Shown here: positions 29,736-59,700 of the stretch, piece by piece
Position numbering within the stretch: position 1 is the first letter of the stretch
Layout of the letters: every line of letters starts with the position of its first letter
Assembly (NCBI GenBank): GCA_002269645.1
Contig: NIVC01002619.1
Coordinates: 7,580-71,579 of the forward strand
Reading direction: 5' to 3'
Length of the DNA: 64,000 nucleotides
DNA from: Macrostomum lignano
Lineage: Eukaryota
The notes under the pieces: generated by a model
What the model saw: only the letters and a program-made list of their open reading frames with translations
What the model was told of the DNA's origin: nothing
The model's database searches: none
Made by a program: the position numbers and the translations under genes

Positions 29736-30284
29736 GTAAGTACTAGAATATATTAAATTGTAGTTACGAGCGTAACTTTTTTATAAGCTTTCGATACCCC
29801 GTGGCTTCACTGTTTTGTGTGCAATATCAAATTTTCAACGAAAACAATGATTTTGAATTTTTTAGCCTAATAATGCATATAAGAAATGCATATTGATGTA
29901 AATAATAAGTCACCGGCTTTTGATCTCAAATCCACCTATATTTATTCGCAATAGCTCATTCAAATTTCTTTGGGTCACTCGCTACAATTTTTGCACTTTT
30001 TCAACTGCAATGCCTATTATTGTGTAATTCCATTGCATTGTCAGAACGTTCTTGCAATTTTTATAGGGTCTCTTTTTGTGAGGATGTTTTTGGATAATAT
30101 AATAATGTTAATATACTCATAAATTAGAAGATTTTTGTTTTAATTGTCCCGTCAGCTGTGTAAACTCATGTACATGCATCTTTCAGCTGTCGTTGCGGCT
30201 TATTATTGTGATTTACAGATGTAGGTTGCAAATCCCCACTTTGTCTCCTAAGACACATTTCCCATCCTAGACACTTATTTCTCA

Positions 30285-34805: not shown

Positions 34806-34888
34806 ATGCACTCATAACTCATCAACACTCATCTCCGGTGTGTTCTCCAAACTTCATGCCACTAATCAATCCAAGCGCATACAACAGC

Positions 34889-37800: not shown

Positions 37801-40688
37801 CAACTTTGAACCAACCCTGAACCAACTCTGAACAAACCCTGAACCAACTCTGAACCAACTCTGAACCAGCCCTGAACCAACCCTGAACCAACTCTGAACC
37901 AACCCTGAACCAATCCTGAACCAACCCTGAACCAACTCTTAATCAACTCTGAACCAACCCTGAACCAACTCTTAACCAACCCTGAACCAACCCTGAAACA
38001 GCCCTGAACCAACCCTGAACCAACTCTGAACCAACTTTGAACCAACCCTGAACCAACTCTGAACAAACCCTGAACCAACTCTGAACCAACCCTGAACCAA
38101 CTCTGAACCAACTCTGAACCAGCCCTGAACCAACCCTGAACCAACTCTGAACCAACCCTGAACCAATCCTGAACCAACCCTGAACCAACTCTGAACCAAC
38201 TCTGAACCAACCCTGAACCAATCCTGAACCAACCCTGAACCAACTCTGAACCAACTCTGAATTAACTCTGAATCAACCGTGAACCAACCATGAACCAACT
38301 CTGAATCAACCGTGAACCAACCCTAAACCAACCCTGAACCAACCCTGAACTAACCCTGAACCAACCCTGAATCAACTCTGAATCAACCCTGAATCAACTC
38401 TGAATCAACCGTGAACCAACACTGAGACAACCCTAAATCAACCCTGAACCAACTCTGAACCAACCCTGAATCAACTCTGAATCAACTCTGAATCAACCGT
38501 GAACCAACCCTAAACCAACCCTGAACAAACCCTGAACTAACCCTGAACCAACCCTGAATCAACTCTGAATCAACCCTGAATCAACTCTGAATCAACCGTG
38601 AACCAACACTGAGACAACCCTAAATCAACCCTGAACCAACTCTGAACCAACCCTGAATCAACTCTGAATCAACTCTGAATCAACCGTGAACCAACCCTAA
38701 ACCAACCCTGAACCAACCCTGAACTAACCCTGAACCAGCCCTGAACCAACCCTGAACCCACACCCGAAGGTGGGTCGCGCGGGCTCCGAGGAGCTGCTGG
38801 TGTGGGCTCGGTCTGCTGACTGCCCCCTTACAGACGAGTCGGCCATCTCTGCGGACGTGGCCACCGCCAACAGCATTCTGCACCTGGTGCACACCATCAA
38901 GACTCTCGAATCCGAGGAGCAACAGTTGAAACTGCGAATATCGGCCGGCCGAGACGAGTGCAAACGCCTGCTCAGAGACGGTCGCAAAGACAAAGCTCTT
39001 GTTGTTATGCGACGGACCAAAGCGACTGAGACTCTGCTGGACGAGCGGAAACAGCAGCTGATGAATCTGGACCGGATGCTCATACAGGTTCAGATGGCTA
39101 ACAGTAATAAGCAGGTGAGTAGCGGTGGCCTGAGTTTGCCCTCAAACGCCAAAATTTTCCTAACGGCTCAAAATCAGTTTTGATCCTCTAAGAATCACCT
39201 CTGACCCCCAAGAATTGCCTCTGATCCCCATCCCCAATAATACTCTTTGGTCCTCCAAGAATCGCCTCTGATCCCCATCCCCAATAATCACCTTTGATCC
39301 TCCAAGAATCGCCTCTGACCCTCATCCCCAATAATCACCTTTGATCCACCAAGAATCGCCTCTAACCCTCATACCCAATAATCACCTTTGATCCACCAAG
39401 AATCGCCTCTGACCCTCATACCCAATAATCACCTTTGATCCACCAAGAATCGCCTCTGACCCTCATCCCCAATAATCACCTTTGATCCACCAAGAATCGC
39501 CTCTGACCCTCATCCCCAATAATCACCTTTGATCCACCAAGAATCGCCTCTGACCCTCATCCCCAATAATCACCTTTGATCCTCCAAGAATCACCTCTGA
39601 CCCCCAAGAATTGCCTCTGACCCCCAAGAATCGCCTCTGATCCCCATCCCCAATAATACTCTTTGGTCCTCCAAGAATCGCCTCTGACCCTCATCCCCAA
39701 TAATCACCTTTGATCCTCCAAGAATCGCCTCTGACCCCCATCCCCAATAATCACCTTTGATCCACCAAGAATCGCCTCTGACCCTCATCCCCAATAATCA
39801 CCTTTGATCCACCAAGAATCGCCTCTGACCCAATAAAAGAATCGCCTCTAACCCAATAAAAGAATCGTTTCTGACCCAATAAAAGAATCGCCTGTGATCC
39901 CAATAAAAGAATCGCCTCTGACCCCAATAAAGAATCGCCTCTGATCCCAATAAAAGAATCGCCTCTGACCCCAATAAAGAATCGCCTCTGATCCCAATAA
40001 AAGAATCGCCTCTGATCCCAATAAAAGAATCGCCTCTGACCCCATAAAAGAATCGCCTCTGACCCTAATAAAAGAATCGCCTCTGACCCAATAAAAGAAT
40101 CGCCTCTGACCCAATAAAAGAATCGCCTCTGACCCAATAAAAGAATCGCCTCTGACCCAATAAAAGAATCGCCTCTGACCCAATAAAAGAATCGCCTCTG
40201 ACTTCAAAATAAGAATCGCCTCTGACCCAATAAAAGAATCGCCTCTGACCCCCATGTAAAATTACCCTGCCCCGCAGGTGCTGGACGCATTCAAGGTCAC
40301 CAGAGACTGGTTCAAAACCTCGCAAGCAGCCGAGGCCGACTCTCACGAGGCCGCTCACGAAGCTCTGGGCGAAATTCGCGACGTCCTCGACGAGCAGCGC
40401 GAATTGGCCGACGCCCTCGCCTACTCGCCTGGCGCTGAAGGCCTGGACGATAGCGAGCTGGAGTCCGAGCTGGACAAGCTGCTTTTAGAAGAAGCGGAAC
40501 AGCCAGACTCTGCAGCCGGCAATTCTACTAAGCGGAAGAAGCCGGCAGCGGCCGACGCCGAATTGGATGCCAAATTTTCTGAACTCGACGTTGATAGCCT
40601 GCAGCTGCCCGACGTGTCCGACCTGCCGCTGCCGCACAGCCCCAACGTGTCTCTTGACGAGTTGAAGAAGCGACTGCAGGCGCTTTGA
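34889..40688 (+). CDS. CHMP7: Charged multivesicular body protein 7 (ESCRT-II-like winged-helix N-terminus plus Snf7 domain), 5 exons, 509 aa
   Basis: Exons: 34889-35283, 36423-36639, 37077-37238, 38770-39114, 40278-40688. Phases are consistent, 1530 nt. N-terminus LPPEWSDDE..YPLFHAFKRPRAVDPDSFDRKMKFWSRL matches the CHMP7 start. The Snf7-like helical region reads CKRLLRDGRKDKALVVMRR..NLDRMLIQVQMANSNKQVLDAFK, followed by an acidic tail ending LDELKKRLQAL. Confidence 0.9.
35318..36398. repeat. 24-bp minisatellite GACTGACTCACCTGACACCCGGAT (CHMP7 intron 1)
   Basis: About 44 copies. Confidence 0.97.
36700..37010. repeat. Degenerate 22-bp repeat CTACTGACATATTAGTGACATT (CHMP7 intron 2)
   Basis: About 13 degenerate copies. 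Confidence 0.8.
37408..38758. repeat. 11-bp minisatellite AACYCTGAACC (CHMP7 intron 3)
   Basis: About 120 copies, running to about 10 nt before the acceptor. Confidence 0.97.
39183..40252. repeat. Two-part minisatellite with core AAGAATCGCCTCTGACCC (43-bp then 21-22-bp units; CHMP7 intron 4)
   Basis: Unit length switches near 39830. Confidence 0.95.
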
Positions 40689-41819: not shown

Positions 41820-43672
41820 AAGCCAATTCAATTAGGGGATTCATTAGCCAATTTAATTAGGGGATTCATTAGCCAATTTAATTAGGGGATTCATTAGCCG
41901 ATTCAATTAGGGGATTCATTAGCCAATTCAATTAGGAGATTCATTAGCCAATTCAATTAGGAGATTCATTAGCCAATTCAATTAGGAGATTCATTAGCCA
42001 ATTCAATTAGGAAATTCATTAGCCAATTTAATTAGGGGATTTATTAGCCAATTTAATTAGGAGATTCATTAGCCAATTCAATTAGGAGATTCATTAGCCA
42101 ATTCAATTAGGAGATTCATTTGCCAATTCAATTAGGAGATTCATTAGCCAATTTAATTAGGGGATTTATTAGCCAATTTAATTAGGGGATTCATTAGCCA
42201 ATTCAATTAGGGGATTCATTAGCCAATTCAATCAGGTGATTTATTAGCCAATTAAATTAGGGGATTCATTAGCCAATTCAATTAGGTGATTCATTAGCCA
42301 ATTCAATTAGGGGATTTATTAGCCAATTAAATTAGGGGATTCATTAGCCAATTCAATTAGGGGATTCATTAGCCAATTCAATTAGGTGATTTATTAGCCA
42401 ATTCAATTAGGAGATTCATTAGCCAATTCAATTAGGTGATTTATTAGCCAATTCAATTAGGGGATTCATTAGCGAATTCAATTAGGGGATTTATTAGCCA
42501 ATTAAATTAGGGGATTCATTAGCCAATTAAATTAGGGGATTCATTAGCCAATTAAATTAGGGGATTCATTAGCCAATTCAATTAGGGGATTCATTAGCCA
42601 ATTCAATTAGGAGATTCATTAGCCAATTCAATTAGGTGATTTATTAGCCAATTCAATTAGGGGATTCATTAGCCAATTCAATTAGGGGATTCATTAGCCA
42701 ATTCAATTAGTATATTCATTAGCCAATTAAATTAGGGGATTCATTAGCCAATTCAATTAGTATATTCATTAGCCAATTCAATTAGTATATTCATTAGCCA
42801 ATTCAATTAGTATATTCATTAGCCAATTCAATTAGGATATTCATTAGCCAATTCAATTAGTATATTCATTAGCCAATTCAATTAGGATATTCATTAGCCA
42901 ATTCAATTAGGGGATTCATTAGCCAATTCAATTAGGGGATTCATTAGCCAATTCAAATGGGGGTTCATTAGCCAATTCAATTAGGGGATTCATTAGCCAA
43001 TTCAATTAGGGGATTCATTAGCCAATTCAATTAGTATATTCATTAGCCAATTCAATTAGGGGATTCATTAGCCAATTCAATTAGTATATTCATTAGCCAA
43101 TTCAATTAGTATATTCATTAGCCAATTCAATTAGTATATTCATTAGCCAATTCAATTAGTATATTCATTAGCCAATTCAATTAGTATATTCATTAGCCAA
43201 TTCAATTAGTATATTCATTAGCCAATTCAATTAGGGGATTCATTAGCCAATTCAATTAGGATATTCATTAGCCAATTCAATTAGGATATTCATTAGCCAA
43301 TTTAATTAGTATATTCATTAGCCAATTCAATTAGTATATTCATTAGCCAATTCAATTAGGATATTCATTAGCCAATTCAATTAGGATATTCATTAGCCAA
43401 TTCAATTAGTATATTCATTAGCCAATTCAATTAGGGGATTCATTAGCCAATTCAATTAGGATATTCATTAGCCAATTCAATTAGTATATTCATTAGCCAA
43501 TTCAATTAGGGGATTCATTAGCCAATTCAATTAGGATATTCATTAGCCAATTCAATTAGGGGATTCATTAGCCAATTCAATTAGGATATTCATTAGCCAA
43601 TTCAATTAGTATATTCATTAGCCAATTCAATTAGGGGATTCATTAGCCAATTCAATTAGGATATTCATTAGT
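41820..43672. repeat. 25-bp minisatellite GGGGATTCATTAGCCAATTCAATTA
   Basis: About 74 copies. Confidence 0.98.
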
Positions 43673-43981: not shown

Positions 43982-45907
43982 ATGACTTGTTCTCCATGTC
44001 ATGTCAATGGCGATGAGTATTGCACATTGATGCTTACCAGCAACGGAAGTATAGGGTTGGATCCTGGTGAAGCTATACTATTTTTGTCAAATATTGTTAC
44101 GGATAATATTCTCATATCATTTGGACCTACTCCCGTGCGAACCTCCTTCCTTCAACATTCTTGTTTCAGTGAGTTCTCAGCCGATCTATGGTGAGATTGA
44201 AAATATTCTAGTTTCACCTCCACCACAACCTCACCTCCACCTAAACCACAACCTCGACCACAACCTCAGCCTCAACCACCAACTGCACAACCACATTGGC
44301 AAGCATATCCAAAGCGTAACGTCTGTAAAGGTTTCTGCAACTGCTTCAAAAGCAGAAATTGCGCCTGGTCTTTGGTTGCATTTCTTCTTCATTTGCTGTT
44401 GGCCTGTTGTCTGACATTGACCGTAGTGCTTTTTGGCCCGCTGCGGCTGTTAAAGGATAATGGACTGGTGAGCTGACACTGAAAATGGTAAAAGAAAGGT
44501 ATTTTAGGCGAAAGAAAATATATTTTCAGCTAAAAATTCTGCAAATTCTAGATAATAAATTCTGAGATTCTTGGCAGAAAATTCTGTAGATTCTGGGCAG
44601 AAAATTCGGCAGCTTCTAGGCAGAAAATTTGGCAGCTTCTGGGCAGAAAATTCTGTAGATTCTGGGCAGAAAATTTGGCAGATTCTATGCAGAAAATTCG
44701 GCAGATTCTGGGCAGAAAATTTGGCAGCTTCTGGGCAGAAAATTCGGCAGATTCTGGGCAGAAGTACTGCAGATTCTGGGCAGAAAATTTGGCAGATTCT
44801 GGGCAGAAAATTTGGCAGATTCTATGCAGAAAATTCGGCAGATTCTGGGCAGAAAATTTGGCAGATTCTGGGCAGAAGTACTGCAGATTCTGGGCAGAAA
44901 ATTTGGCAGATTCTGGGCAGAAAATTCGGCAGCTTCTAGGCAGAAAATTTGGCAGCTTCTGGGCAGAAGTACTGCAGATTCTGGGCAGAAAATTCGGCAG
45001 ATTCTGGGCAGAAAATTCGGCAGATTCTGGGCAGAAAATTCGGCAGATTCTGGGCAGAAAATTCGGCAGCTTCTGGGCAGAAAATTTGTCAGATTCTGGG
45101 CAGAAAATTCTGTAGATTCTGGGCAGAAGTACTGCAGATTCTGGGCAGAAAATTTGGCAGATTCTGGGCAGAAGTACTGCAGATTCTGGGCAGAAAATTT
45201 GGCAGATTCTGGGCAGAAGTACTGCAGATTCTGGGCAGAAAATTTGGCAGATTCTGGGCAGAAAATTCGGCAGCTTCTGGGCAGAAAATTTGGCAGATTC
45301 TGGGCAGAAAATTTGGCAGATTCTGGGCAGAAAATTCGGCAGATTCTGGGCAGAAAATTCGGCAGATTCTGGGCAGAAAATTCGGCAGATTCTGGGCAGA
45401 AAATTCGGCAGATTCTGGGCAGAAAATTCGGCAGATTCTGGGCAGAAAATCGGCAGCTTCTGGGCAGAAAATTCTGTAGATTCTGGGCAGAAAATTTGGC
45501 AGATTCTGGGCAGAAAATTCGGCAGATTCTGGGCAGAAGTACTGCAGATTCTGGAAAGAAAATTCGGCAGATTCTTGGTATAAAATTTAAGTAGTTTCAA
45601 AGCAGAAACTTCGGCAGATTCATTGCAATGAGGGGGATAGACTTGGGATTGAGAATTGAAAATTCAGGAAAGAGAGGAAGAAAGATTCATGGGGGAGGGG
45701 CAAAAATGAAGGTAATTATGGACAGACATAGCAGACCAACGCTAATTATGTGCTGTTCCTGATTCATCAGCTAATTACCTACGTGCCTACGTGTATTCAG
45801 TAACTATAGAAAACTCCTCCCACACCAACATGGCACAGGTACGAGTATCACAAGAGTGGATCAACTTGTCGTCGAAATTCGAGTCTACAACCCCATGGTT
45901 CGTGACT
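43982..45907 (+). pseudogene. Truncated pseudogenic duplicate (copy A) of the TNF-like ligand gene at 48546-51086; only exons 1-3 retained
   Basis: Exon-like blocks 43982-44066, 44170-44467 and 45810-45907 are clearly paralogous to copy B exons 1-3 (the TM-coding stretch is nearly identical). Lesions: -1 frameshift near 44232, +1/-1 shifts in exon 3, and TGG>TGA in the PHGSW motif. Homology to B intron 3 continues to about 48045, then stops before the TNF-domain exons. Confidence 0.8.
44555..45625. repeat. 22-bp minisatellite GGCAGAAAATTYGGCAGATTCTG-type (intron 2 of copy A)
   Basis: About 48 copies; same family as 49315-49620. Confidence 0.95.
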
Positions 45908-46283
45908 GTAAGTTCATTTGCTAGACAAATGAAATGCTTACATGTACTCGAAATTAACGTCTATATTAGGATATTTTCTTGGCCTGAAGCCGAACTTCCA
46001 TATTTTCTGGCGTACATTTATTTATAGCCAGCTAGTTATTTTTGCGAGATGTTTTTTTTTGAAAGACGATTCTACGAGCGTAATTGTTGTAAACATGAAA
46101 CCGTGGCTCTCTGCCTGCGTACGCGATGTGGTTCCTAATTATTAATCTAGAATATACACATGCACATAAATCTATATTTAGTCATTTGTTTCATACTGTT
46201 TATAACACACTTACTTAATTAAAGTGCGAAGGTAGAGAGTGGAAGTAGAGGAAATTGAGGTAGAGGGCGGGGTAGAGGGGCGG

Positions 46284-47454
46284 TGTTAGGCTTTCTGTTC
46301 TCCGGGGTCTTAATTTATCCGGGGGACACTGCAAAGCAAAATTATTGTCGCTTTGCGATAACCTACCCTGGATAATCCAAGGCACAACAAAATCGGGCTT
46401 TGAAATATCCTGGGTCTTAAATTGTCCGGGGTGAATAAAGATTGGTGGTCAAGTTATTTACCTGATAAAGCGCATGTGAATGGGGCAGGACATCATTTCG
46501 AGAGAATGGGGCTGACTCAGAGGCCAGGGAAGGGCCCTGACTGCACCTTAGACAGGGGAGGGGCAGATGAGGTGCAGTCTAAGAATAAATCGATAATGGA
46601 CTGGCGTCACATTGCTAGCACTACAAGCGTACGTGCAATGAAGATGAGTGTACGAGCTAATAGCACACAAGGGAAAGTGTTGCGCAAATTACGAGTATAT
46701 TACACGTAACTTTTAAGATATACAGAGTTTATTTCTTGTCGAAGTTCTAAGTTCAGGAAAATTTATCTCTCGATGGCTAAAGTATCGCTGAACCAAGTGT
46801 TCTTTATGTTTTGAACGAGTATGTTGAGCTTCCGGAAAATTCCAGTACGAAAGAGAGAGATAATCTAAAAAGAAAAATGAGAGAAAAGAGCAAAAACTTC
46901 ACGCTTCATTCAGCGGATGGCCTGTTTTTGATTGATCGAATTACATGTATGAATAGATTGGTGAATCAAGTAACAGTTTTTCGGCTGACAATGTATAGTA
47001 TCAATAGCTTTAATTTTGCTTCTGTTTGGAGTGTGAAATGCAAGATAGTGATTGAAAATACACTCGGTTAAATAAGCATGACGCAGATGTTTGCCAATTG
47101 AAAAAGTAGCAAAAATGTTTTCTTACTTTGCCTTTCCTAACCCCGGATATCAGTAGCCGGATGTCCTAAAGCAAACCTCTGTCTCCGCAGACTGACCCCT
47201 CTCTTTCAACCTACAGTCGGATGTCCTACGACAACTTCCCCTTCTTGTGATCTCCGGGCCGGATAGCAGAGTCAGTGCCGTAGGATGTCCGGGAGAGACA
47301 TCTCAAAGTGCCCGGACAATGCAAAGCAGCTCAAGATATCCGGTTAGGAGAAAACAAAGCAGGCTTTTTGCTTGGCAGTATCCGGGCGGATATCGTAAGT
47401 GCGTTCGGATATCCGGGCCAGACAAAAAAACCCCGGAAAGTCTAAACTGTAACA
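46284..47454 (+). mobile_element. Non-autonomous Ginger-like (Gypsy-integrase-related) DNA transposon
   Basis: Termini TGTTA...TAACA, exact 4-bp TSD GCGG (46280-46283 and 47455-47458), and imperfect TIR sharing TCCGGGGT. It interrupts sequence that is continuous in paralog B. Internal frame 46811-47071 (YVELPENSSTKERDNLKRKMREKSKNFTL..DGLFLIDR..NRLV) resembles the GIN1/Ginger integrase N-terminus. Confidence 0.7.
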
Positions 47455-47714
47455 GCGGAGATAGAGAGGGTACATGCAGAGGGCGGGGGTAGAGGCGGAT
47501 ATAGAGGTTAGAGATGGAGGGCTGGAGGTAGCTTGTAGTAGGTGTGGGGCAGTGTACATCTGCCTCCATCTCTCCCTCTAATTTCCCCTCTCTGTCTCGC
47601 TCACTTGGTCCGGCGTTATAACTGCACCGTACAACAGCAAAAACAACAAAAGCAACAAAGACAACAACAAAAAACAACAAAAACAGCAACAACAACAGCA
47701 ACAACAGCAACTGG

Positions 47715-47952
47715 TTACGGTCGAGGCGCTGCAGCTCCGCTGTGTGGCCTCCCGGGTCACAGGCGTCATGAACCGCGTGCTCGTCGGCGCTCCTGCGCCC
47801 ACCACCGAGTGGACCGTCGCGCACATCGTGCCGATCCCGAAGAAGGCATTGACAACGCGGAAAGAAGACCACCGCGGGATCTCGCTGATGTCCTGCACCC
47901 CGAAGCTCTTCAACCGGCTTCTGCTCGATCGTCTGCAGTCGGTGCTGGACCG
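47715..47952 (+). mobile_element. Non-LTR retrotransposon (RTE-like) reverse transcriptase fragment
   Basis: EWTVAHIVPIPKK..DHRGISLMSCTPKLFNRLLLDRL is the typical RT domain 0/1 motif. GC-rich, truncated on both sides, and preceded by an (AAC)n-rich tract at 47630-47712. Confidence 0.85.
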
Positions 47953-48074
47953 GAGATAGAGGGGTTAAAAGTGTAAGGGCCGAGGTAGACATAATGAAGG
48001 TATAAAACCGAGAAGTCTAATTGCACTCTGTAAAACATGAAGCGTGGCACACACCCTCAATTACCCCAGCTAAT

Positions 48075-48226
48075 GCTGGCACCCATTTTACAGCTGGGTG
48101 AACTGAAGCAATGCAAGAGTTAAGTGTCTTGCTCAAGAATACAAGTTGTTCTAGTGCGATCGGAAATCGAACCCCCAACCATCAAGTCGTGAGTCCGATG
48201 CTCTCACCACTAGGCTACAAACCCTC
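48075..48226 (-). mobile_element. tRNA-derived CORE-SINE-like element
   Basis: The minus strand has an A box (TAGCCTAGTGG) and a B box (GGTTCGATTTCC). Adjacent plus-strand cccattttacagctgggtgaactgaagc..ttaagtgtcttgctcaag resembles the MIR/CORE domain. Confidence 0.7.
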
Positions 48227-48545
48227 ACTCAAAATGAGATCACGCAAGTGTAACTAATGATTTTATATTATCATACTCGAAATTCTATTAATTCTTTTTG
48301 AAATTGAAACCACCTGGTGCCTAAAATAGCGGCTAGAAAGCCTATTTTTATTCCATTTTTATCTGTAGAAGTTTAAGAAAAGAATGTCACTCTGGAAAGT
48401 TACTTGGATAAGCTACCTGAGCCAATTAAATTTATTTATTCTATGAAATATAACTGGAGCCAGAATTAACTGCGCTTACAAAGCTAATGCTAAGCTGCCG
48501 GACTAATAGGAACACCTGGACTCTACTTCTGCTGTTTCACTCGCA

Positions 48546-51086
48546 ATGGCTTGTTCTCAATGTCGTGTCAGTAGCGGTCATGCTTATTGCACATTGGTGC
48601 CTACAATTGACGGCATTATGATGGTGGATCCTGGTATGAAACCAGTTATTATTGCATAAAACTATATTCTCATACCGTTACGAACTACATGTAGATAACT
48701 CCCGTCCGAACCTCTTTCAACTCTCCCGCTACAGAGACTTCGGAGCCGCAATATGTAGAGATTGAAAAAATTACTCCAGCTTCACCTCCGCCGCGACCGC
48801 CGAGACACGGAAAAACGTCACCTCCGCAACCTCCACCACAACCTCCACCTAAACCTAGACCACAACCTCCACCTAAACCTATACCACAACCTCCACCTAA
48901 ACCTAAACCACAACCTCCACCTAAGCCACAACCTCGACCACAACCTCGACCACAACCTCAACCACAACCTCAACCACAACCTCGACCACAACCTCAACCA
49001 CAACCTCGACCACAACCTCAACCACAACCTCGACCACAACCTCAACCACAACCTCGACCACAACTTCCACCACCTACTGCACAACCACATTGGCAAGCAT
49101 ATCCAAAGCGTAACGTCTGTAAAGGTTTCTGCAACTGCTTCAAAAGCAGAAATTGCGCCTGGTCTTTGGTTGCATTTTTTCTTCATTTGCTGTTGGCCTG
49201 TTGTCTGACATTGACCGTAGTGCTTTTTGGCCCGCTGCGGCTGTTAAAGGATGATGGACTGGTGAGCTGACACTGAAAATGGTAAAAGAATGGGATTTTA
49301 GGCGAAAGAAATGAGATTCTGAGCTGAAAATTCTGCAGATTCTAGATAATAAATTCTGAGATTCGGGGCAGAAAATTCTGTAGATTCTTGGCAGAAAGTT
49401 CTGTAGATTCTTGGCAGAAAATTCTGTAGATTCTGGGCAGAAAACTCTGTAGATTCTTGGCAGAAAGTTCTGTAGATTCTGGGCAGAAAATTCTGTAGAT
49501 TCTGGGCAGAAAATTCTGTTAGACTCAAGGCAGAAAATTCTGTAGATTCTGGGCAGAAAATTCTGTAGCTTCTAGGCAGAAAATTCTGCAAAATTTACTA
49601 CGATTTAGTCTACGGCAGATTCATAGTAATGAAGGGATAGATTCGTCATGGAAAATTGAAAAATTCAGGGAAGAATGAAAGGAATATTTAGTGGACGAAA
49701 ATTAGGATAATTATATAGACAGACGAAGTTAACTAAAGCTAATCATGTGTTGTTCCTGATTCATTAGTTAGCTAACTATTCAGTAGAAAACTCCCCCACA
49801 CCAACACGGCGCAGGTACGAGTATCACAAGAGTGGATCAACTTGTCGTCGAATTTCGAGTCTCCAAGCCTCACGGGTCTTGGCTGTAAGTCCATTTGCCG
49901 GGCATATGAATTGCTTACTCAGCAATTACGTCTATAGTATACAATTATTTTCTTGGCCTGAACTTCCATATTTTCTGGCGTACATTTAGCCAGCAAATTG
50001 TTTAACAAAACTGGTCTTTCGTCAACCGTCAATGTTTGACATAAACACATGAAGCCGCTACTTTGCCAGCGTGCGCGATGTGGTTTTTAACTGTTAGTCT
50101 GAATTATACCCGTGCACAAAAATTATATTTAGTCATTCAATTCACTGTTTATAGCACACTTACTTGAAGTGCGAAGGTAGAGGAGTGAAGATAGAGGGTG
50201 AAGGTAGATGTAGAAGGCGGGGTAGAGGACAGAGGTATAGAGGGGCGAAGATAGAGAGGGTGTAGTTAGAAGGGCGGAAGTAAAGGGCGGAGGTAGAGAG
50301 CGGAGATGGAGGGGGCGGAGATAGTGGGGGTGGATGTTGAGGTAGAGGCCGGAGGTAGATGGGGCGGAGATAGTGGGGGTGTAGTTAGAAGGGTGAAGGT
50401 AGAGGGCGGAGGTAGAGTGTGGACTTACGAGCGTAGAGGGGCGGAGGTAGATATAATGAAGGTATAAAATATGAGATGCCCAATTGCACTTTGCAAAACA
50501 CGAAGCCCGACAGCCGGGAACTACAAGCAACTTTTTCAACTGAAGCCAAACTATTTCAGTACAAACTCGCTGCTAAGCCAAACAAAGATTGATTGCTCAC
50601 CTGCCAATGCCCCAACTTCAGCCGTGAACTTCGCCGCAATCGACCCGTCTATTAAGATGGTCAAGATTGAAGAGGACGAAAACGGCCAAAGAAGCAAAAT
50701 ACTCATCAAACAGGGTGGTCTGTTCCGCATCAATTTCAATGTGAGTAGAAGCTCAACCTCACTGAAAGTAGCAGATCTTATTTGATTCTTATCTGATTTA
50801 TATTTAGTCATTAATTAAAAAGACCTTATATTTCCAGGTAAATTTTGATTGCAAGAACGGCGTAACTACTGTTCAATCGAGAGTTCAATATTCGACGCCG
50901 AAGCATCAGGAGTCCCAAAAACTGCACGAGTGCATGCGAAAATGGATTGGTCAGTCAAGCCGCGATTTAATTGTGTGCAGTTTCAGCATAGTTCGTCCAC
51001 TAACGGTCAATAGTTGGCTGCAGTTGCAGTTTTCTAGATATAACTGCAAAAATAACTTTACTGTAAGCTTGGAGAGAATGGTTTAA
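48546..51086 (+). CDS. Putative TNF-superfamily-like type II membrane ligand (copy B) with Pro-rich cytoplasmic domain, 5 exons, 380 aa
   Basis: Exons: 48546-48633, 48735-49261, 49787-49884, 50560-50740, 50838-51086. GT-AG junctions, phases 1/0/2/0, 1143-nt open frame. Architecture: MACSQC..YC N-terminus, YVEI, about 100-aa PQPPPKP/PQPR tract, CKGFCNCFKSRNC, TM helix AWSLVAFFLHLLLACCLTLTVVLFGPL, then a beta-rich domain with ILIKQGGLFRINFN|VNF (TNF/C1q-like xxGxYxxxxxVxF strand) ending FTVSLERMV*. The TNF assignment rests on motif pattern and an intron position shared with gene C. Confidence 0.7.
49315..49620. repeat. 22-bp minisatellite (intron 2 of TNF-like copy B)
   Basis: About 13 copies of GCAGAAAATTCTGTAGATTCTG-type units. 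Confidence 0.93.
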
Positions 51087-52954: not shown

Positions 52955-55158
52955 ATGTTCTACGCTCGTACATGGTAACTCTTTTATGTTTGATACGGTG
53001 GCTTTTCAATGTCTGACATAGTGGCTCTTCTATGTTTGACATGGGGGCTCTTCTATGTTTGACATGGGGGCTCTTCTATGTTTGACATGGGGGCTCTTCT
53101 ATGTTTGACATGGGGGCTCTTCTATGTTTGACAAAGTGGCTTTTTAATGTTTGACATGGTGGCTCTATTATGTTTGACATGGTGGCTCTTTAATGTTCGA
53201 AATGGTGGCTCTTTAATGTTCAAAAAGGTGGCTCTTTTATGTTTGACATGGTGGCTCTTTAATGTTTGACATGGTGGCTCTTTAATGTTTGACATGGTGG
53301 CTCTTTAATGTTAGACAAAGTAGCTCTTTAATGTTTGACATGATGGCTCTTCAATGATAGACATGGTGGCTCTTTAATTTTTGACATGGTGGCTCTTTAA
53401 TGTTGGACATGGTGGCTCTTTAATGTTAGACATGGTGGCTCTTTAATGTTCGACATAAAGTCACTTATATGTTTGACATGATGGCTCTTTTATGTTTAAC
53501 ATGGTGGCTCTTTAATGTTTGACATGGTAGCTCTTTAAAGTTCGACATGGTGGCTCTTTAATGTTCGACATGGTGGCTCTTTACTGTTCGACATGGTGGC
53601 TCTTTTATGTTAGACATGGTGTTGCTTCAATGTTTGACATGGAGTTACGTATATGTTTTACATGGTGGCTCTTTTATGTTCGACGTGGTGGCTCTTTAAT
53701 GTTTGACATGGGGTCTCTTCAATGTTTGACATGGAGTTACGTATATGTTTGACATGGTGGCTCTTTAATGTTTTACATGGTGGCACTTTCATGTTTGACC
53801 TGGTGGCTCTTAAATGTTTGACATGGTGGCTCTTGATTGTTCGACATAGAGTCATGTATATGTTTGCCATGGTGGCTCTTTAATGTTAGACCTGGTGGCT
53901 CTTTTATGTTTTGCATGGTGGCTCTTTTATGTTCGACATGGTGTCTCTTCAATGTTTGACATGGAGTCATGTATATGTTTGACATGGTGGCTCTTGTATT
54001 TTTAACACGTTGGCTCTTTAATGTTCGACATGGTGGCTCTTTAATGTCTAACATGGAGTCACGTATATGTTTGACATGGAGTCATGTATATGTCTGATAT
54101 GGTAGCTCTTTAATGTTTTACATGGAGTTACCTATATGTTTCACATGGTGGCTATTTTATGTTTGACATCATGGTGGTTCTTAAATGTTCGACATGGTGG
54201 CTCTTTAATGTTTTACATGGTGGCTCTTTAATATTTGACATGGTGGCCCTTTTATGTTCTACACGGTGGCTCTTTAATGTTTGACATGGAGTCATGTATA
54301 TGTTTGACCTGGTGGCTCTTTAATGTTTGACATGGTGGCTCTTTAATGTTTTATATGGTGGCACTTTTATGTTTGACCTGGTGGCTCTTTAATGTTTGAC
54401 ATGGTGGCTTTTTAATATTTGACATGGTGGCACTTTCATGTTTGACCTGGTGGGTCTTTAATGTTTGACATGGTACCTCTTTTATGTTCGACATGGTGGC
54501 TCTTTAATGTTTTACATGGTGGCTCTTTAATGTTTGACATGGTGACTCTTTTATGTTCTACATGGTGGCTCTTTTATGTTCGACATGGTGGCTCTTTAAT
54601 GTTTGATAAGGTGGCTCTTTAATGTTTAAAATGGTGGCTCTTTAATTTTCGAAATGGTGGCTGTTTTATGTTTGACATGGTGGCTCTTTAATGTTCGACA
54701 TGGTGGCTCTTTAATGTTCTTAATGGTGTCTGTTTTATGTTTGACATGGCGGCTCTTTAATGTTTGACATGGTAACTCTTTTAGGTTTGAAATGGTGTCT
54801 CTTTAATGTTTGACATGGTGGCTTTTTAATGTTTGACATGGTGGCTTTTTATTGTTCGACATGGTGGCTCTTTTAGGTTTGAAATGGTGGCTCTTTAATG
54901 TTTGACATTGTGGCTCTTTAATGTTCGACATGGTGGCTCTTTAATGTTTGACATGGTAACTCTTTTATGTTTGATATGGTGGCTCTTTTATGTTCGACAT
55001 GGTGGCTCTTTAATGTTCGACATGGTGGCTCTTTTAGGTTTGAAATGGTGGCTCTTTAATGTTTGACATTGTGGCTCTTTAATGTTTGAAATGGTGGCTC
55101 TTTAATGTTTGACATTGTGGCTCTTTAATGTTTGAAATGGTGGCTCTTTAATGTTTAG
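52955..55158. repeat. 23-24-bp minisatellite TTTAATGTTTGACATGGTGGCTC
   Basis: About 95 moderately diverged copies. Confidence 0.96.
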
Positions 55159-56771: not shown

Positions 56772-59700
56772 ATGGCTAATAATACAGTAAAGTTCAGCAA
56801 AGAGCAGGACAATGTATACTTCACCATAGTATCGCTGACCGGTGAACAGCCGCAGCCGTCACCGCAGCTGCCTGCCCCAGGTACCAGCAATGAACTTCCG
56901 CCTTCAATTCTCTTGTCGTCATCGCCAATTCCAGAAGCCTCTACGTCACATGGCCGCCGGTTCGAGCAGAATCGACAGGCAAAAACTCGGATGACCTCAA
57001 GTAGAGGTTCGCAGAGGTCTTCGTCGTTCTTTGCCAGACGGCAGAAGCAGCAACACCAGGAGCAGCAGCAGATGAAACAGCAGTCTAGTCTGCGCCAGCA
57101 GGATAAACGAGGTGCCCGGACTCCTTCGTCGAGACAATCGTCGGGAACTCGAAGGTCTGGAAGGTCTCGAAGCAGTGCTCGAAATTCGCAGGAGCGTCGC
57201 CAGCTGTCAATCATCAATACCACATCCTTCATCGTGTTCATGGCCAACCTACTGGCAACCATGGCTGTCCTGGCCATGTTCTCGTCTGACTTCGCTGCCC
57301 TGACTGCTGCAGGCGGGAGCCCAGCGATGAAGCTGAAAGTGAACAGGTATTTAGTCTGATTTGTTTTGGGGAGGGAGCTAGGGAGAGACAGGCGTTGCGA
57401 GGAAGAGAGGGGAGAGGAGAGGAAGAGTGGGAGAGAGGGAGAGTGGGAGAGAGGGAGAGTAGGAGAGAGGGAGAGTGGGAGAGAGGGAGAGTGGGAGAGA
57501 GGGAGAGTGGGAGAGAGGGAGAGTGGGAGAGAGGGAGAGTGGGAGAGAGGGAGAGTGGGAGAGAGGGAGAGTGGGAGAGAGGGAGAGTGGGAGAGAGGGA
57601 GAGTGGGAGAGAGGGAGAGTGGGAGAGAGGGAGAGTGGGAGAGAGGGAGAGTGGGGGAAAGGGAGGATGGGGGAAAGGAAGAGTGGGGGAGAAAGAGAGT
57701 AGGGGAGAGGGGAGAGGAGAGAGGGGGAGAGGAAGAGAGGGGTAGAGGAAGAGAGGGGTAGAGGAAGAGAGGGGTAGAGGAAGAGAGGGGTAGAGGAAGA
57801 GAGGGGTAGAGGAAGAGAGGGGTAGAGGAAGAGAGGGGTAGAGGAAGAGAGGGGTAGAGGAAGAGAGGGGGAGAGGAAGAGAGGGGTAGAGGAGGAGAGG
57901 GGGAGAGGAAGAGAGGGGTAGAGGAAGAGAGGGGAGAGGAGGAGAGGAGAAGAGGAAGAGAGGGGGAGAGGAGAGGGGGAGAGGGAGAGAGGGGGGAGAG
58001 GAGAGGGGGAGAGAGAGAGGGAGAGAGGGGGAGAGGACAGAGAAGGAGAGAGAGGGAGGGGGAGAAGACAGAGAAGGAGAGAGAGGGAGGGGGAGAAGAC
58101 AGAGAAGGAGAGAGAAGGAGAGAGGGGGAGAGGACAGAAAAGGAGAGAGAGAGGGAGAGAGGGGGAGAGGACAGAGAAGGAGAGAGAGAGGGAGAGAGGG
58201 GGAGAGGACAGAGAAGGAGAGAGAGGGAGAGAAGGGGAGAGGACAGAGAAGTGAGCATGCAGTTGTCAATCAGAATGGAATGCCGCACCCGCAGGCTTGG
58301 CTCAGTCTGTCAATCGGCAGAAGCCGGATCTGTCAGACAAGCGAGGACACAGAATGTCACCGCCAAGATCAAAGCACCTATTTTTCGGGGGGTGAGCATG
58401 GTTGCATGTACATATGAATAGTTTTTATGCCCTAAAATCAATTCATAGTCATATTTCAAGTCTATTGACTTGGGCGTATTCTAACGATTTGAACTTATTT
58501 TGTCATTTCTTTTTAAGCGAAGTTGAAAATCTTGTTAGCAAGTTCAGCTTCAGAAAATCTGGTGTGCAAAATTCAAGAAATTTTTAAGTAAATTGCTGCA
58601 CTGATTGCAATCTGTCTTTGACCAGAATTTTAGTAGAGAAATCAAATGCTTTGCTGGTGTTTAAGGCCAGGCCATATCAATGCTTTCTAGAGGGACAGTA
58701 GTGTGCACAAGAGTGCCTATAATGTAGGGTGTGACAAGATCGCCTATACCGTATAGGGTGTGACAAGAGTGCCTATATTGTATGGGGTGTGACAAGAGTG
58801 CCTAATGAAGAGTGACGAGGTTCACTACATATTGCTTTTCTGCACATCATGAGAACAGTTGCAACCAAACAAAGATCTCCAACTCATCCGCAATCGCATA
58901 GTGAACTCAATCGGCCCCCTGACGTGCAGCGACTGGTCTAAGCACTCTGCCAACTGTGAAAACGGCATCCGTGGTCCTCTGTACAAACTGATTGGCAACT
59001 CCAACCGGATCCAGGTTGCTAGGGATGGCTACTACAGGATATACATGATGGTGAGATGAGATGGACTGCCCTACAGCCTCGGACATACATGTACACCTCA
59101 CTCCACCATGCACCCACCTCACTCCACTATACACCCACCTCACTCCACTATACACCCATCTCACTCCGCTATACACCCACCTCACTCCACTATACACCCA
59201 CCCACTCCACTATACACCCACCTCACTCCTCTATACACCCATCTCACTCCGCTATACACCCAACCCACTCCACCGTGCACCCACCTCACTCCACTATGCA
59301 CTCAACCCACTCCACCGTGCACCCACCTCACTCCACCGTGCACCCACCTCACTCCACCTTGCACCCACCTCACTCCACCGTGCACCCACCTCACTCCACC
59401 GTGCACCCACCTCACTCCACCTTGCACCCACCTCACTCCACCGTGCACCCACCTCACTCCACCGTGCACCCACCTCACTCCACCGTGCACCCACCTCACT
59501 CCACTATACACCCACCCACTCCACTATACACCCACCCACTCCACTATACACCCACCACTCCACCATGCACCCACCTCACCCGCTATACACCCTTCCTCCT
59601 CTAAACCTAAAAGTACTTCAGGCTACTTACTACCATATAAAAGTTCAATTTTATACCCCGATATCAACACGTCTCACATATGGCAGGTATCCTCTTGTTG

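What the first reader, a model, noticed from the sequence alone, without database searches (positions are those of the whole stretch)
48546..49261. FasL-like cytoplasmic architecture in TNF-like gene B: Cys cluster, YxxI, long polyproline tract, juxtamembrane cysteines
Seen: this frame has no start codon near its beginning, so the ORF track shows only the shifted His/Asn frame. The spliced frame reads MACSQCRVSSGHAYC..PQYVEIEKITPASPPPRPPRHGKTSPPQPPPQPPPKPRPQ..(PQPR/PQPQ)n..CKGFCNCFKSRNC-TM. Established: mammalian FasL has a cytoplasmic proline-rich domain that binds SH3/WW proteins and controls lysosomal sorting and reverse signalling, and PxxPxR (PPRPPR) is a class II SH3 ligand. Inference: convergent reverse-signalling or sorting tail, with a possible CxxC-x5-H-x2-C metal site and palmitoylation sites. 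The stalk is very short with no RxxR site, so the protein is probably membrane-retained.
Basis: partly seen in the sequence, partly recalled or inferred. Interest (0 to 1): 0.75.

Follow-up and report, generated by a model that had tools for sequence, protein, structure and literature searches.

The report
Proline-rich tail on flatworm TNF-like gene
An unannotated gene of the flatworm Macrostomum lignano appears to encode a membrane-anchored, very divergent TNF-like protein whose long proline-rich inner tail really is in the sequence, but the tail is written by an unstable in-frame DNA repeat and its proposed FasL-like signalling role remains an untested analogy.

Summary
The reading is correct. 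Window 48546-48633 and 48735-49261 join through GT-AG sites into MACSQCRVSSGHAYC...YVEI...PPRPPR...(PPPKPxPQ)n(PQPR/PQPQ)n...CKGFCNCFKSRNC-TM. Three more exons extend it to a 380-codon ORF.

The window is Macrostomum lignano contig NIVC01002619.1. Nothing is annotated at this locus, and two searches of billions of proteins found no relative.

"TNF-like" has weak support from three independent tests:
- Pfam TNF gives no hit.
- Two low-confidence AlphaFold models both retrieve almost only TNF-superfamily ligands from the PDB.
- A profile of published flatworm TNF ligands aligns collinearly at the GxYRIxxxVxF strand (4 of 2000 shuffles score as well).

The proline tract is a coding minisatellite of 24-nt and 12-nt units. 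Unit numbers differ between the two genomic copies, always in frame. The upstream partial duplicate ("gene A") has only about 25 such residues. It also carries a 1-nt frameshift and lacks the ectodomain exons, so it is a pseudogene.

Y-x-E-I, the three N-terminal cysteines and the juxtamembrane cysteine cluster are conserved. The CxxC-x5-H-x2-C spacing is not. SH3 consensus motifs lie only in the proximal part of the tract.

The FasL analogy is reasonable in architecture but untested in function. "Short stalk, hence membrane-retained" is unsupported.

The parts
48546..48633 (+). Gene B exon 1. It starts at the ATG and encodes residues 1-29 plus the first base of codon 30: MACSQCRVSSGHAYCTLVPTIDGIMMVDP. 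It contains Cys3, Cys6, His12 and Cys15.
   Evidence: Translation. Donor G|GTATGA. In-frame stops lie upstream. The exon is present in L002 with a 6-nt insertion, giving MACSHSQC.
48634..48734 (+). Intron 1, 101 nt, GT...AG.
   Evidence: It differs at 2 of 101 positions between the two genomic copies.
48735..49261 (+). Gene B exon 2, residues 30-205: the rest of the cytoplasmic tail, the membrane segment and the start of the stalk.
   Evidence: It is open only in the Pro frame. Acceptor CTACAG|, donor TG|GTGAGC. It is intact and 12 nt longer in L002.
48752..48763 (+). Y36-V-E-I, which fits YxxPhi or a pY-x-E-I SH2-type motif. It sits in the best-conserved block of the N-terminal tail, Y-x-E-I-E-x-I.
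   Evidence: It is conserved as YGEIENI in paralog A, which is otherwise about 50% identical here.
48782..48841 (+). Non-repeat start of the proline-rich region, SPPPRPPRHGKTSPPQPPPQ. It includes PPRPPR (48788-48805), a class II SH3 consensus PxxPxR.
   Evidence: L002 differs by a single Pro-to-Thr change, and PPRPPR is unchanged. It is absent from paralog A.
48842..48925 (+). 24-nt coding repeat units CCTCCACCTAAACCTNNACCACAA, encoding PPPK-PxPQ. There are 3.5 units here. They carry three [RK]xxPxxP and four PxxPx[RK] matches.
   Evidence: L002 has 4.5 units.
48926..49057 (+). 12-nt coding repeat units CCACAACCTC[GA]A, encoding PQPR or PQPQ. There are 11 units. Prolines alternate, so there is no PxxP core; this part is likely an extended polyproline-II type spacer.
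   Evidence: L002 has 10 units, one of them PQTP.
49118..49156 (+). Basic, cysteine-rich segment next to the membrane, CKGFCNCFKSRNC (Cys158, 162, 164, 170). These are candidate S-acylation sites.
   Evidence: The segment is identical in L002 and in both A copies.
49157..49237 (+). Predicted single membrane segment AWSLVAFFLHLLLACCLTLTVVLFGPL, acting as a type II signal anchor.
   Evidence: It contains the hydropathy maximum (19-residue windows starting at 173-177). The positive charges lie on its N-terminal side (sequence).
49262..49786 (+). Intron 2. It contains a 23-bp satellite, AGATTCTGGGCAGAAAATTCTGT, in 12 copies at 49314-49588.
   Evidence: The same satellite occurs in 46 copies in intron 2 of paralog A (44557-45621).
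49787..49884 (+). Gene B exon 3, residues 206-238 (KTPPHQHGAGTSITRVDQLVVEFRVSKPHGSW-L): the stalk and possibly the first strands.
   Evidence: It is in phase with exon 2 and ends in phase 2. It is 88% identical to exon 3 of A, against about 73% for the surrounding intron.
50560..50740 (+). Gene B exon 4, residues 238-298. It includes NGQRSKILIKQGGLFRINFN, the candidate B-C strands of a TNF homology domain.
   Evidence: Acceptor TTTCAG|, donor AAT|GTGAGT, phase-compatible. The hhalign and HMM alignments to flatworm TNF ligands fall here.
50838..51086 (+). Gene B exon 5, residues 299-380 plus the TAA stop. It encodes the C-terminal half of the jelly roll and ends ...NNFTVSLERMV*.
   Evidence: AlphaFold predicts strands throughout this stretch, and it is the best-scoring part of both models.
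43982..45905 (+). 'Gene A', a partial tandem duplicate of gene B exons 1-3: 43982-44066, 44170-44467 and 45811-about 45905. It has a 1-nt frameshift inside a short proline tract, its exon 3 ends in a different phase, and it has no exons 4-5. It is a pseudogene fragment.
   Evidence: The same frameshift is present in the second genomic copy.

Best explanation
SHOWN. Window 48546-51086 (+) holds a five-exon, GT-AG-spliced ORF of 380 codons in Macrostomum lignano (contig NIVC01002619.1). It is not in the GenBank annotation. It has no detectable relative in two searches of billions of proteins.

The predicted product is a type II membrane protein:
- a 170-residue N-terminal cytoplasmic tail;
- one membrane segment (residues 171-197);
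- a stalk;
- an all-beta C-terminal domain that two independent single-sequence AlphaFold models fold into a TNF-type jelly roll.

The tail has four parts:
(a) a short N-terminus with three cysteines;
(b) an acidic Y-x-E-I-E-x-I block;
(c) about 100 residues that are 53% proline. These are written by a non-repeat piece (SPPPRPPRHGKTSPPQPPPQ) followed by in-frame 24-nt (PPPK-PxPQ) and 12-nt (PQPR/PQPQ) tandem units, whose numbers differ between the two genomic copies;
(d) a basic, four-cysteine segment directly before the membrane.

INFERRED MECHANISM. The protein is a lineage-specific, fast-evolving TNF-superfamily-like ligand held in the membrane.
- The juxtamembrane cysteines are S-acylated, as in TNF and FasL, and fix the tail base to the bilayer.
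- The proximal proline units offer SH3 class I and class II docking sites.
- The distal (PQ/PR)n run is an extended polyproline-II spacer.
- Y36-x-E-I serves as an AP-type sorting signal or, when phosphorylated, as an SH2 site.

Together this would be a sorting or reverse-signalling tail analogous to, but not homologous with, the FasL tail. It arose by recent minisatellite expansion.

Sub-confidences:
- real gene: about 0.75;
- Pro frame and type II topology, given a real gene: about 0.85;
- TNF-type fold: about 0.65;
- the tract functions as an SH3/WW docking module: about 0.3.
For: Gene model:
- All four introns are GT-AG, the phases are consistent, and the CDS is 1143 nt ending in TAA.
- Only the Pro frame is open across exon 2.
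- Exons 1-3 are intact in the second copy L002, and all length changes there are multiples of 3.
- Exon 3 is better conserved than its flanking intron between A and B.

Organism: L001 from GCA_002269645.1 is 100% identical to the window.

Fold:
- Model 1 has pLDDT 47 and model 2 has pLDDT 56.8, with 40 residues at 70 or above.
- Foldseek against the PDB returns TNFSF ligands for about 49 of 50 and about 46-48 of 50 top hits. They include EDA-A1, 4-1BBL, TNF, TRAIL, RANKL, CD40L, Eiger, BAFF, FasL and TL1A, at E about 1e-3 to 3e-2 and TM up to 0.60.

Sequence:
- hhalign against eight published flatworm TNF ligands aligns only NGQRSKILIKQGGLFRINFNVNF with NGESNAVVVQKPGIYRIYGQVSF.
- An HMM of the same set scores 7.4 bits in a collinear alignment, and 4 of 2000 shuffles reach that score.
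- The distance from that strand to the C-terminus (81 residues) matches the canonical M. lignano ligand (86 residues).

Tail:
- Y-x-E-I, the three N-terminal cysteines and the juxtamembrane cluster are conserved in paralog A.
- One pair of canonical M. lignano TNF ligands also carries CCQGRAC just before its membrane segment.
- FasL precedent: a proline-rich domain binding SH3/WW proteins, N-terminal tyrosines, and sorting to secretory lysosomes (PMC2647539).
Against: - No transcript or protein evidence exists. The gene is not annotated, and neither the protein nor any relative was found in searches of 5.8 and 1.84 billion sequence clusters.
- Pfam PF00229 gives no hit even at E = 10, whereas the known M. 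lignano TNF ligands score below 1e-10 (PMC7519573).
- Both structure models are low-confidence, and the Foldseek E-values are only about 1e-3.
- Between the two genomic copies, non-repeat exons are as diverged as introns (7 of 473 against 11 of 753 positions), with 5 non-synonymous to 2 synonymous changes.
- A against B gives dN/dS of about 0.7. No purifying selection is therefore demonstrable.
- Tract length is unstable, and it is short in the paralog.
- Half of the tract has no PxxP core. There is no PPxY, no PPLP and no run of four or more prolines.
- No canonical AATAAA follows the stop closely.
Confidence: 0.4

Rival explanations
1. The gene is real, but the proline tract is a near-neutral coding minisatellite. 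On this view, replication slippage or unequal exchange of 12-nt and 24-nt units in a repeat-prone genome inflated a short PPPKPQPRPQ-type linker into a disordered spacer. That spacer has no specific partners. The SH3-like motifs are by-products of Pro/Lys/Arg/Gln composition. Any function of the tail resides in the conserved Y-x-E-I block and the acylatable cysteines.
For: - TRF period 12, 21 copies.
- Units are nearly identical at the codon level, and unit numbers differ between the two genomic copies: one more 24-nt unit and one fewer 12-nt unit.
- Paralog A has only about 25 such residues.
- The window carries 94 TRF rows, and satellites fill nearly every intron.
- 15% of the genome is simple or tandem repeat (PMC5730564).
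- The distal half has no PxxP.
- No constraint is detectable.
Against: - Both copies of B keep the frame and a long tract.
- The non-repeat PPRPPR and the PPPK-PxPQ units give ten consensus SH3 matches, conserved in L002.
- Functional proline-rich domains such as FasL's are also low-complexity.
- Neutrality and docking are not mutually exclusive.
Confidence: 0.35
2. Gene B is not a functional gene. It would be an unexpressed or decaying lineage-specific locus, or an over-interpreted chain of open exons. The tail features would then have no biology.
For: - It is not annotated in a transcriptome-guided annotation (PMC5730564).
- The protein and all relatives are absent from very large protein collections.
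- dN/dS is about 1 between copies.
- Its neighbour and closest relative, gene A, is a demonstrable pseudogene.
- No obvious poly(A) signal is present.
Against: - 380 codons stay open across five exons with correct GT-AG sites and phases.
- The product has a coherent architecture: cytoplasmic tail, one membrane segment, and a beta domain ending at the C-terminus.
- AlphaFold folds it twice, without an alignment, into one specific known fold. Random ORFs do not do this.
- Both genomic copies are intact for exons 1-3.
Confidence: 0.15
3. The ectodomain is a jelly-roll domain of another kind, such as C1q-like, a spore or phage receptor-binding type, or a novel family. The comparison with TNF ligands, and therefore with FasL, would then be only topological.
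For: - Pfam TNF gives no hit.
- Sequence identity to TNFSF structures is 8-19%.
- Non-TNF jelly rolls (ExsFA, a phage receptor-binding protein, a hyaluronan-binding module) appear among the hits.
- The first two TNF strands are not modelled.
Against: - TNFSF ligands make up nearly all top hits in both searches, whereas C1q-domain structures do not appear.
- The type II anchor with the domain ending exactly at the C-terminus is the TNFSF arrangement.
- The only profile alignment falls on the diagnostic G-x-[YF]-R-I-x-x-x-V-x-F strand of the flatworm TNF ligands.
Confidence: 0.1

Closest known systems
Human/mouse Fas ligand (FASLG, CD178) cytoplasmic tail
   Same: - Both are type II proteins with a TNF-type C-terminal domain.
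- Both have an unusually long cytoplasmic tail: 80 residues in FasL, 170 here.
- Both carry N-terminal tyrosines, an extended proline-rich domain just upstream of the membrane, and cysteine next to the membrane.
- PxxP-type SH3 consensus sites are present.

(FasL facts from PMC2647539; FasL Cys82 palmitoylation is from my own knowledge.)
   Different: - There is no sequence homology.
- FasL has true polyproline runs (PPPPPPPP, PPLP). This tail never exceeds PPP, and half of it is alternating PxPx.
- The tract here is a recent, length-variable tandem repeat.
- No casein kinase I motif was identified.
- The ectodomain is not recognisably FasL-like, or even Pfam-TNF-positive.
- No functional data exist.
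Canonical Macrostomum TNF ligands (Bertevello et al. 2020, PMC7519573; e.g. BOX15_Mlig009154g1, M_lignano_0006798)
   Same: - Same species.
- Type II membrane anchor.
- The C-terminal domain shares the G-x-[YF]-R-[IV]-x-x-x-[VI]-x-F strand, and the spacing to the C-terminus is similar.
- One pair has a CCQGRAC cluster just before the membrane segment.
   Different: - Those ligands score below 1e-10 on PF00229; gene B gives no hit.
- Their tails are 5-35 residues with no proline-rich region.
- Similarity to gene B is only 7.4 bits.
Coding minisatellites / (XP)n spacer regions (e.g. TonB (EP)n-(KP)n, trypanosome procyclin EP repeats; from my own knowledge)
   Same: - Alternating X-Pro dipeptide repeats are encoded by short in-frame tandem DNA units.
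- They are extended and rigid rather than globular.
- Copy number varies between alleles or copies.
   Different: Those examples are periplasmic or extracellular. Here the repeat is cytoplasmic, in a putative cytokine-like ligand, and it is adjoined by PxxP-containing units.

Membership tests
TNF superfamily ligand (TNFSF) | Type II membrane topology with the homology domain at the extreme C-terminus | tested here: met
   The single hydrophobic segment spans residues 171-197. There is no N-terminal signal peptide. Five Lys/Arg lie in the 15 residues before the segment. The beta domain ends at the stop codon.
TNF superfamily ligand (TNFSF) | Sequence match to the TNF homology domain profile (Pfam PF00229) | tested here: not met
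   hmmscan of the full protein and of the ectodomain at E up to 10 gives no TNF hit. phmmer against PDB sequences also finds none.
TNF superfamily ligand (TNFSF) | TNF-type beta jelly-roll fold | tested here: inconclusive
   Two single-sequence AlphaFold models (pLDDT 47 and 57) each return TNFSF ligands as nearly all of the top 50 PDB hits (E 1e-3 to 3e-2, TM 0.35-0.60). The result is consistent and specific. However, model confidence is low and strands A/A' are not modelled.
TNF superfamily ligand (TNFSF) | Detectable relationship to TNF ligands of the same lineage | tested here: inconclusive
   hhalign gives probability 2.7%, but on the expected strand. The local HMM scores 7.4 bits in a collinear alignment, with an empirical p of about 0.002.
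TNF superfamily ligand (TNFSF) | Homotrimer formation and binding to a TNFR-type receptor | not testable with these tools
   No multimer prediction or binding assay is available. M. lignano has one TNFR (PMC7519573).
FasL-type cytoplasmic tail (functional analogy, not homology) | Extended proline-rich domain between the N-terminus and the membrane segment | tested here: met
   Residues 45-147 contain 55 Pro in 103 residues.
FasL-type cytoplasmic tail (functional analogy, not homology) | SH3/WW ligand consensus motifs | tested here: met
   There are five [RK]xxPxxP and five PxxPx[RK] matches, all in residues 41-93 and all conserved in L002 apart from one class I site (KTSPPQP), which becomes KTSPPQT there. 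There is no PPxY, no PPLP and no run of four or more Pro. Residues 94-137 have no PxxP.
FasL-type cytoplasmic tail (functional analogy, not homology) | Conservation of the proline-rich domain among relatives | tested here: inconclusive
   The domain is present in both genomic copies of B, with different unit numbers. It is about 25 residues and frameshifted in paralog A. No orthologue from another species could be retrieved.
FasL-type cytoplasmic tail (functional analogy, not homology) | Actual binding of SH3/WW proteins, control of sorting, reverse signalling, and S-acylation of juxtamembrane cysteine | not testable with these tools
   These require pull-downs, imaging and acyl-biotin exchange.
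Zinc-binding CxxC...H..C knuckle | Conserved spacing of the four ligands and a match to a known zinc-binding domain | tested here: not met
   The window has C3-x2-C6-x5-H12-x2-C15. L002 has C3-x4-C8 through an HS insertion. Gene A has Asp in place of His12. Pfam finds no zinc-finger family. The three cysteines themselves are conserved.
Coding minisatellite | Head-to-tail units whose length is a multiple of 3, with copy-number differences between copies | tested here: met
   TRF reports period 12 with 21 copies. The register analysis shows 24-nt units x3.5 against x4.5 and 12-nt units x11 against x10 in the window and L002 respectively.

The most novel reading that the evidence does not exclude
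A flatworm evolved, independently of vertebrates, a FasL-style cytoplasmic tail on an orphan TNF-like ligand that escapes profile detection. That tail combines a proline-rich SH3-docking domain, tyrosine motifs and an acylated membrane-proximal cysteine cluster. The proline-rich domain was built within very recent evolutionary time by in-frame minisatellite expansion, because the neighbouring fossil duplicate preserves the short pre-expansion state. This would be a caught-in-the-act example of how reverse-signalling or sorting tails of TNF ligands arise. It would also add a hidden member to the small TNF ligand repertoire of free-living flatworms.
Probability: 0.2. Interest if true: 0.6.

Novelty: new variant of a known kind. 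Interest (0 to 1): 0.4.

Why it matters
TNF ligands in flatworms were recognised only in 2020, and only in free-living species. All platyhelminths keep a single TNF receptor, whose ligand in parasites is debated (PMC7519573). A further M. lignano ligand-like gene that standard profiles miss would enlarge that repertoire. It would also show that profile-based censuses undercount fast-evolving members.

Among vertebrate TNF ligands, a long proline-rich cytoplasmic tail is considered unique to FasL (PMC2647539). An independent example in a transgenesis-capable flatworm would allow a test of whether such tails generally confer regulated sorting or reverse signalling.

The locus also pairs an expanded tract with a short-tract pseudogene duplicate and a second genomic copy. 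This makes it a neat natural series for how coding minisatellites create low-complexity protein domains.

If the gene turns out to be unexpressed, the finding reduces to an ordinary repeat expansion in a repeat-rich genome.

Tried and rejected
1. Pfam and PDB-sequence searches of the full protein and the ectodomain gave nothing meaningful: a Cohesin hit at E = 0.035 and an amyloid-like hit at E = 0.59.

2. The search for homologous proteins with residues 148-380 gave no hit. The exhaustive HMMER search of 1.84 billion representatives gave two hits at E about 1e-4 to 1e-3. Both are long Ig-like or bacterial repeat proteins and were judged spurious.

4. I tried to obtain exons 4-5 of the second genomic copy through a downstream neighbour. 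The ORF 56772-57359 is not on record and has no homologues, and Pfam finds nothing in the ORFs at 56-64 kb. The ectodomain exons could therefore be checked in one copy only.

5. I considered gene A as an alternative 5' cassette spliced to B's exons 4-5. This was rejected because of the frameshift in its exon 2 and because its exon 3 ends in phase 1 where B's exon 4 needs phase 2.

6. An alternative acceptor for exon 4 at 50546 was rejected because the phase is wrong (sequence).

7. I searched the supplementary data of the flatworm TNF paper for gene B peptides, and they are absent. Gene B is therefore not one of the published ligands.

8. The tRNA-like stretch at 48060-48235 was not confirmed by ARAGORN or Rfam.

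9. The reverse-transcriptase-like ORF at 47700-47960 was not confirmed by Pfam.

10. The selection tests between L001 and L002 and between A and B had too few substitutions to be informative.


Full report
**1. What is in the sequence**

The segment 48546-48633 begins with ATG and ends G|GTATGA. The segment 48735-49261 follows CTACAG| and ends TG|GTGAGC.

Joined, they give 205 codons: MACSQCRVSSGHAYCTLVPTIDGIMMVDPETSEPQYVEIEKITPASPPPRPPRHGKTSPPQPPPQ(PPPKPxPQ)n(PQPR/PQPQ)n..PPPTAQPHWQAYPKRNVCKGFCNCFKSRNC-AWSLVAFFLHLLLACCLTLTVVLFGPL-RLLKDDGL.

The ORF lister shows only the His/Asn frame (48762-49208), because the Pro frame has no start codon in exon 2. Of the three frames, only the Pro frame is open from acceptor to donor. 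In-frame stops precede the ATG.

I extended the model downstream with three more exons: 49787-49884, 50560-50740 and 50838-51086. All introns are GT-AG and the phases are consistent. The CDS is 1143 nt, which is 380 codons plus TAA.

**2. Where it comes from**

A neighbouring CHMP7 gene identified the organism as Macrostomum lignano. The fetched locus L001 (GCA_002269645.1, NIVC01002619.1) is 100% identical to window 24859-50688, so window position x corresponds to contig position x + 7579.

No gene is called in the 10 kb after CHMP7. A second copy of the whole locus, L002 on NIVC01000981.1, differs by about 1.5%. This is expected, because the Mlig_3_7 assembly contains 180 Mb of blocks at least 95% identical, arising from extra chromosomes in the sequenced line. 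In that genome 15% is simple or tandem repeat (PMC5730564).

**3. The paralog 'gene A' is a fossil**

tblastn of the gene B protein against the window finds an upstream tandem duplicate of exons 1-3 at 43982-45905. The duplication runs from 7 bp before the ATG to about 50 bp before B's exon 4 (43975/48539 to 48043/50506). Gene A therefore has no ectodomain exons.

Its proline tract is only about 25 residues and carries a 1-nt frameshift. Its exon 3 ends in phase 1, whereas B's exon 4 needs phase 2. The same defects are present in L002.

A and B are about 66% identical over exon 1 and the 5' part of exon 2. From the end of the tract through the membrane segment they differ at only 2 of 174 positions. 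This indicates a recent gene-conversion tract.

**4. Is the ectodomain TNF-like?**

By standard sequence criteria it is not.
- Pfam gives no TNF hit at E up to 10.
- PDB sequences give no hit.
- Two very large protein searches return nothing credible.

Fold prediction gives a different picture. Two independent single-sequence AlphaFold runs on residues 206-380 and 215-380 gave pLDDT 47 and 57. Both give an all-beta domain. In both cases the best PDB matches are almost exclusively TNF-superfamily ligands: EDA-A1, 4-1BBL, BAFF, TNF, LIGHT, TRAIL, RANKL, CD40L, insect Eiger, FasL, TL1A and OX40L. E-values start at about 1e-3 and TM-scores reach 0.60.

I then took the published Macrostomum and Microdalyellia TNF ligands (PMC7519573, Data S3) and aligned eight of them.
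- hhalign finds one alignment only. It is statistically weak but falls exactly on the diagnostic strand: NGQRSKILIKQGGLFRINFNVNF against NGESNAVVVQKPGIYRIYGQVSF.
- An HMM of their homology domains scores gene B at 7.4 bits in a collinear alignment. Shuffled sequences average -0.3 with SD 1.4, and 4 of 2000 reach 7.4.
- The distances from this strand to the C-terminus agree: 81 residues against 86.

I conclude that a very divergent TNF-type domain is probable, at about 0.65. Family membership by sequence is not met. Gene B is not among the published ligands.

**5. Anatomy of the tail**

- **(a) N-terminus.** Cys3, Cys6 and Cys15 are conserved in L002 and in gene A. The proposed CxxC-x5-H-x2-C spacing is not conserved. 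L002 has an HS insertion giving Cx4C, and gene A has Asp for His12. The metal-site idea is therefore not supported.
- **(b) Y36-V-E-I.** This lies in the best-conserved block of the otherwise fast-diverging N-terminal region. B reads PQYVEIEKI and A reads PIYGEIENI.
- **(c) The proline region (48782-49087).** It has three layers:
  - a non-repeat SPPPRPPRHGKTSPPQPPPQ that includes the class II SH3 consensus PPRPPR;
  - 24-nt units encoding PPPK-PxPQ, 3.5 units in the window against 4.5 in L002;
  - 12-nt units encoding PQPR or PQPQ, 11 units against 10.
  
  All ten SH3 consensus matches (five class I, five class II) lie in residues 41-93. The alternating PxPx half has no PxxP core. There is no PPxY, no PPLP and no run of four or more prolines.
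- **(d) The juxtamembrane cluster.** CKGFCNCFKSRNC, directly before the membrane segment, is invariant in all four copies. One pair of canonical M. lignano TNF ligands has an analogous CCQGRAC. The other canonical ligands have short tails and no proline-rich region.

**6. Selection**

Between L001 and L002, non-repeat exon positions differ at 7 of 473. Non-satellite intron and flank positions differ at 11 of 753. Of the seven exonic changes, five are non-synonymous and two synonymous. Between A and B, dN is 0.22 and dS is 0.31.

No constraint can be demonstrated. However, the samples are tiny, and one partner (A) is a pseudogene.

**7. Interpretation**

The architecture does parallel FasL. FasL's 80-residue tail, with N-terminal tyrosines and a proline-rich domain that binds SH3/WW proteins and directs sorting to secretory lysosomes, is described as unique among TNF ligands (PMC2647539).

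The resemblance is analogy, not homology. It rests on composition and consensus motifs only. The tract's origin as an unstable in-frame minisatellite, in a genome saturated with tandem repeats (94 TRF rows in this window), makes a largely neutral spacer a serious rival.

The inference 'no RxxR and short stalk, hence membrane-retained' does not follow. TNF-family shedding is typically by metalloproteases. In addition, the models leave residues up to about 270 unstructured, so the stalk may be long.

**8. Verdict**

| Question | Verdict |
|---|---|
| Observation | Confirmed |

Most likely this is a real but unannotated, lineage-specific TNF-like type II membrane protein. Its proline-rich tail arose by recent repeat expansion. 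A FasL-like docking or sorting role is possible, at about 0.3, but untested. Expression evidence is the missing decisive piece.

Noticed in passing
window 43982-48060: 'Gene A' is a tandem partial duplicate of gene B exons 1-3. It has a 1-nt frameshift in its short proline tract and no ectodomain exons. Its intron 3 is interrupted by about 1.2 kb of inserted sequence (46290-47455). A GC-rich ORF fragment follows at 47700-47960; from memory it resembles a non-LTR reverse transcriptase, but Pfam did not confirm this.
   Followed up: partly
window 44280-44530 versus 49075-49310: There is a near-identical stretch between the A and B copies: 2 differences in 174 coding nt, and identity continues into intron 2. 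It is flanked by sequence only about 66% identical. This looks like a recent gene-conversion tract. Two residues that differ between B in the window and B in L002 (D203N, F227I) match the A copy.
   Followed up: partly
window 44557-45621 and 49314-49588: The same 23-bp satellite (AGATTCTGGGCAGAAAATTC[TG]G[TC]) sits in intron 2 of both duplicates, with 46 copies against 12. L002 also has a different copy number. This shows how quickly repeat arrays change here.
   Followed up: partly
window 1-64000: The density of tandem repeats is extreme. There are 94 TRF rows, for example 31-bp x140 at 30430-34806, 20-bp x100 at 27731-29736, 25-bp x74 at 41821-43671 and 23-bp x95 at 52970-55156. Most lie in introns or between genes. 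Many create long spurious ORFs in several frames.
   Followed up: no
window 37409-38758: An 11-bp satellite, CCTGAACCAAC, in 123 copies inside the CHMP7 gene resembles the coding 12-mer CCTCAACCACAA of the proline tract. I did not test whether they are related or merely both C/A-rich.
   Followed up: no
window 48060-48235 (- strand): This stretch looks tRNA-derived, with a GGTTCGATTCC-like T-arm, and sits just upstream of gene B's start. It may be a SINE head. ARAGORN and Rfam both report nothing.
   Followed up: yes
window 22295-22726 (+), 34838-40688 (+), 3720-8443 (-): The neighbouring genes are an AP-1/AP-2 mu-type adaptor subunit (first exon hits Pfam Clat_adaptor_s), CHMP7 (matches M. 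lignano BOX15_Mlig019466g1) and a TPR-containing gene on the minus strand. I judged the last to be TTC39-like from memory and did not test it. The order AP-mu then CHMP7 then A/B is the same in the second genomic copy.
   Followed up: partly
window 56772-57359 (+): A 195-codon ORF has a Ser/Arg/Gln-rich start and a hydrophobic end. It has no Pfam match, no homologue in the large protein collection and no annotated gene. It may be the first exon of another unannotated gene, or it may be chance.
   Followed up: partly
window 50173-50460, 46230-46290 and 47455-47530: A degenerate G-rich repeat (GAGGTAGAGGGCG-like) lies in intron 3 of both duplicates. In gene A it is split by the inserted element.
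   Followed up: no
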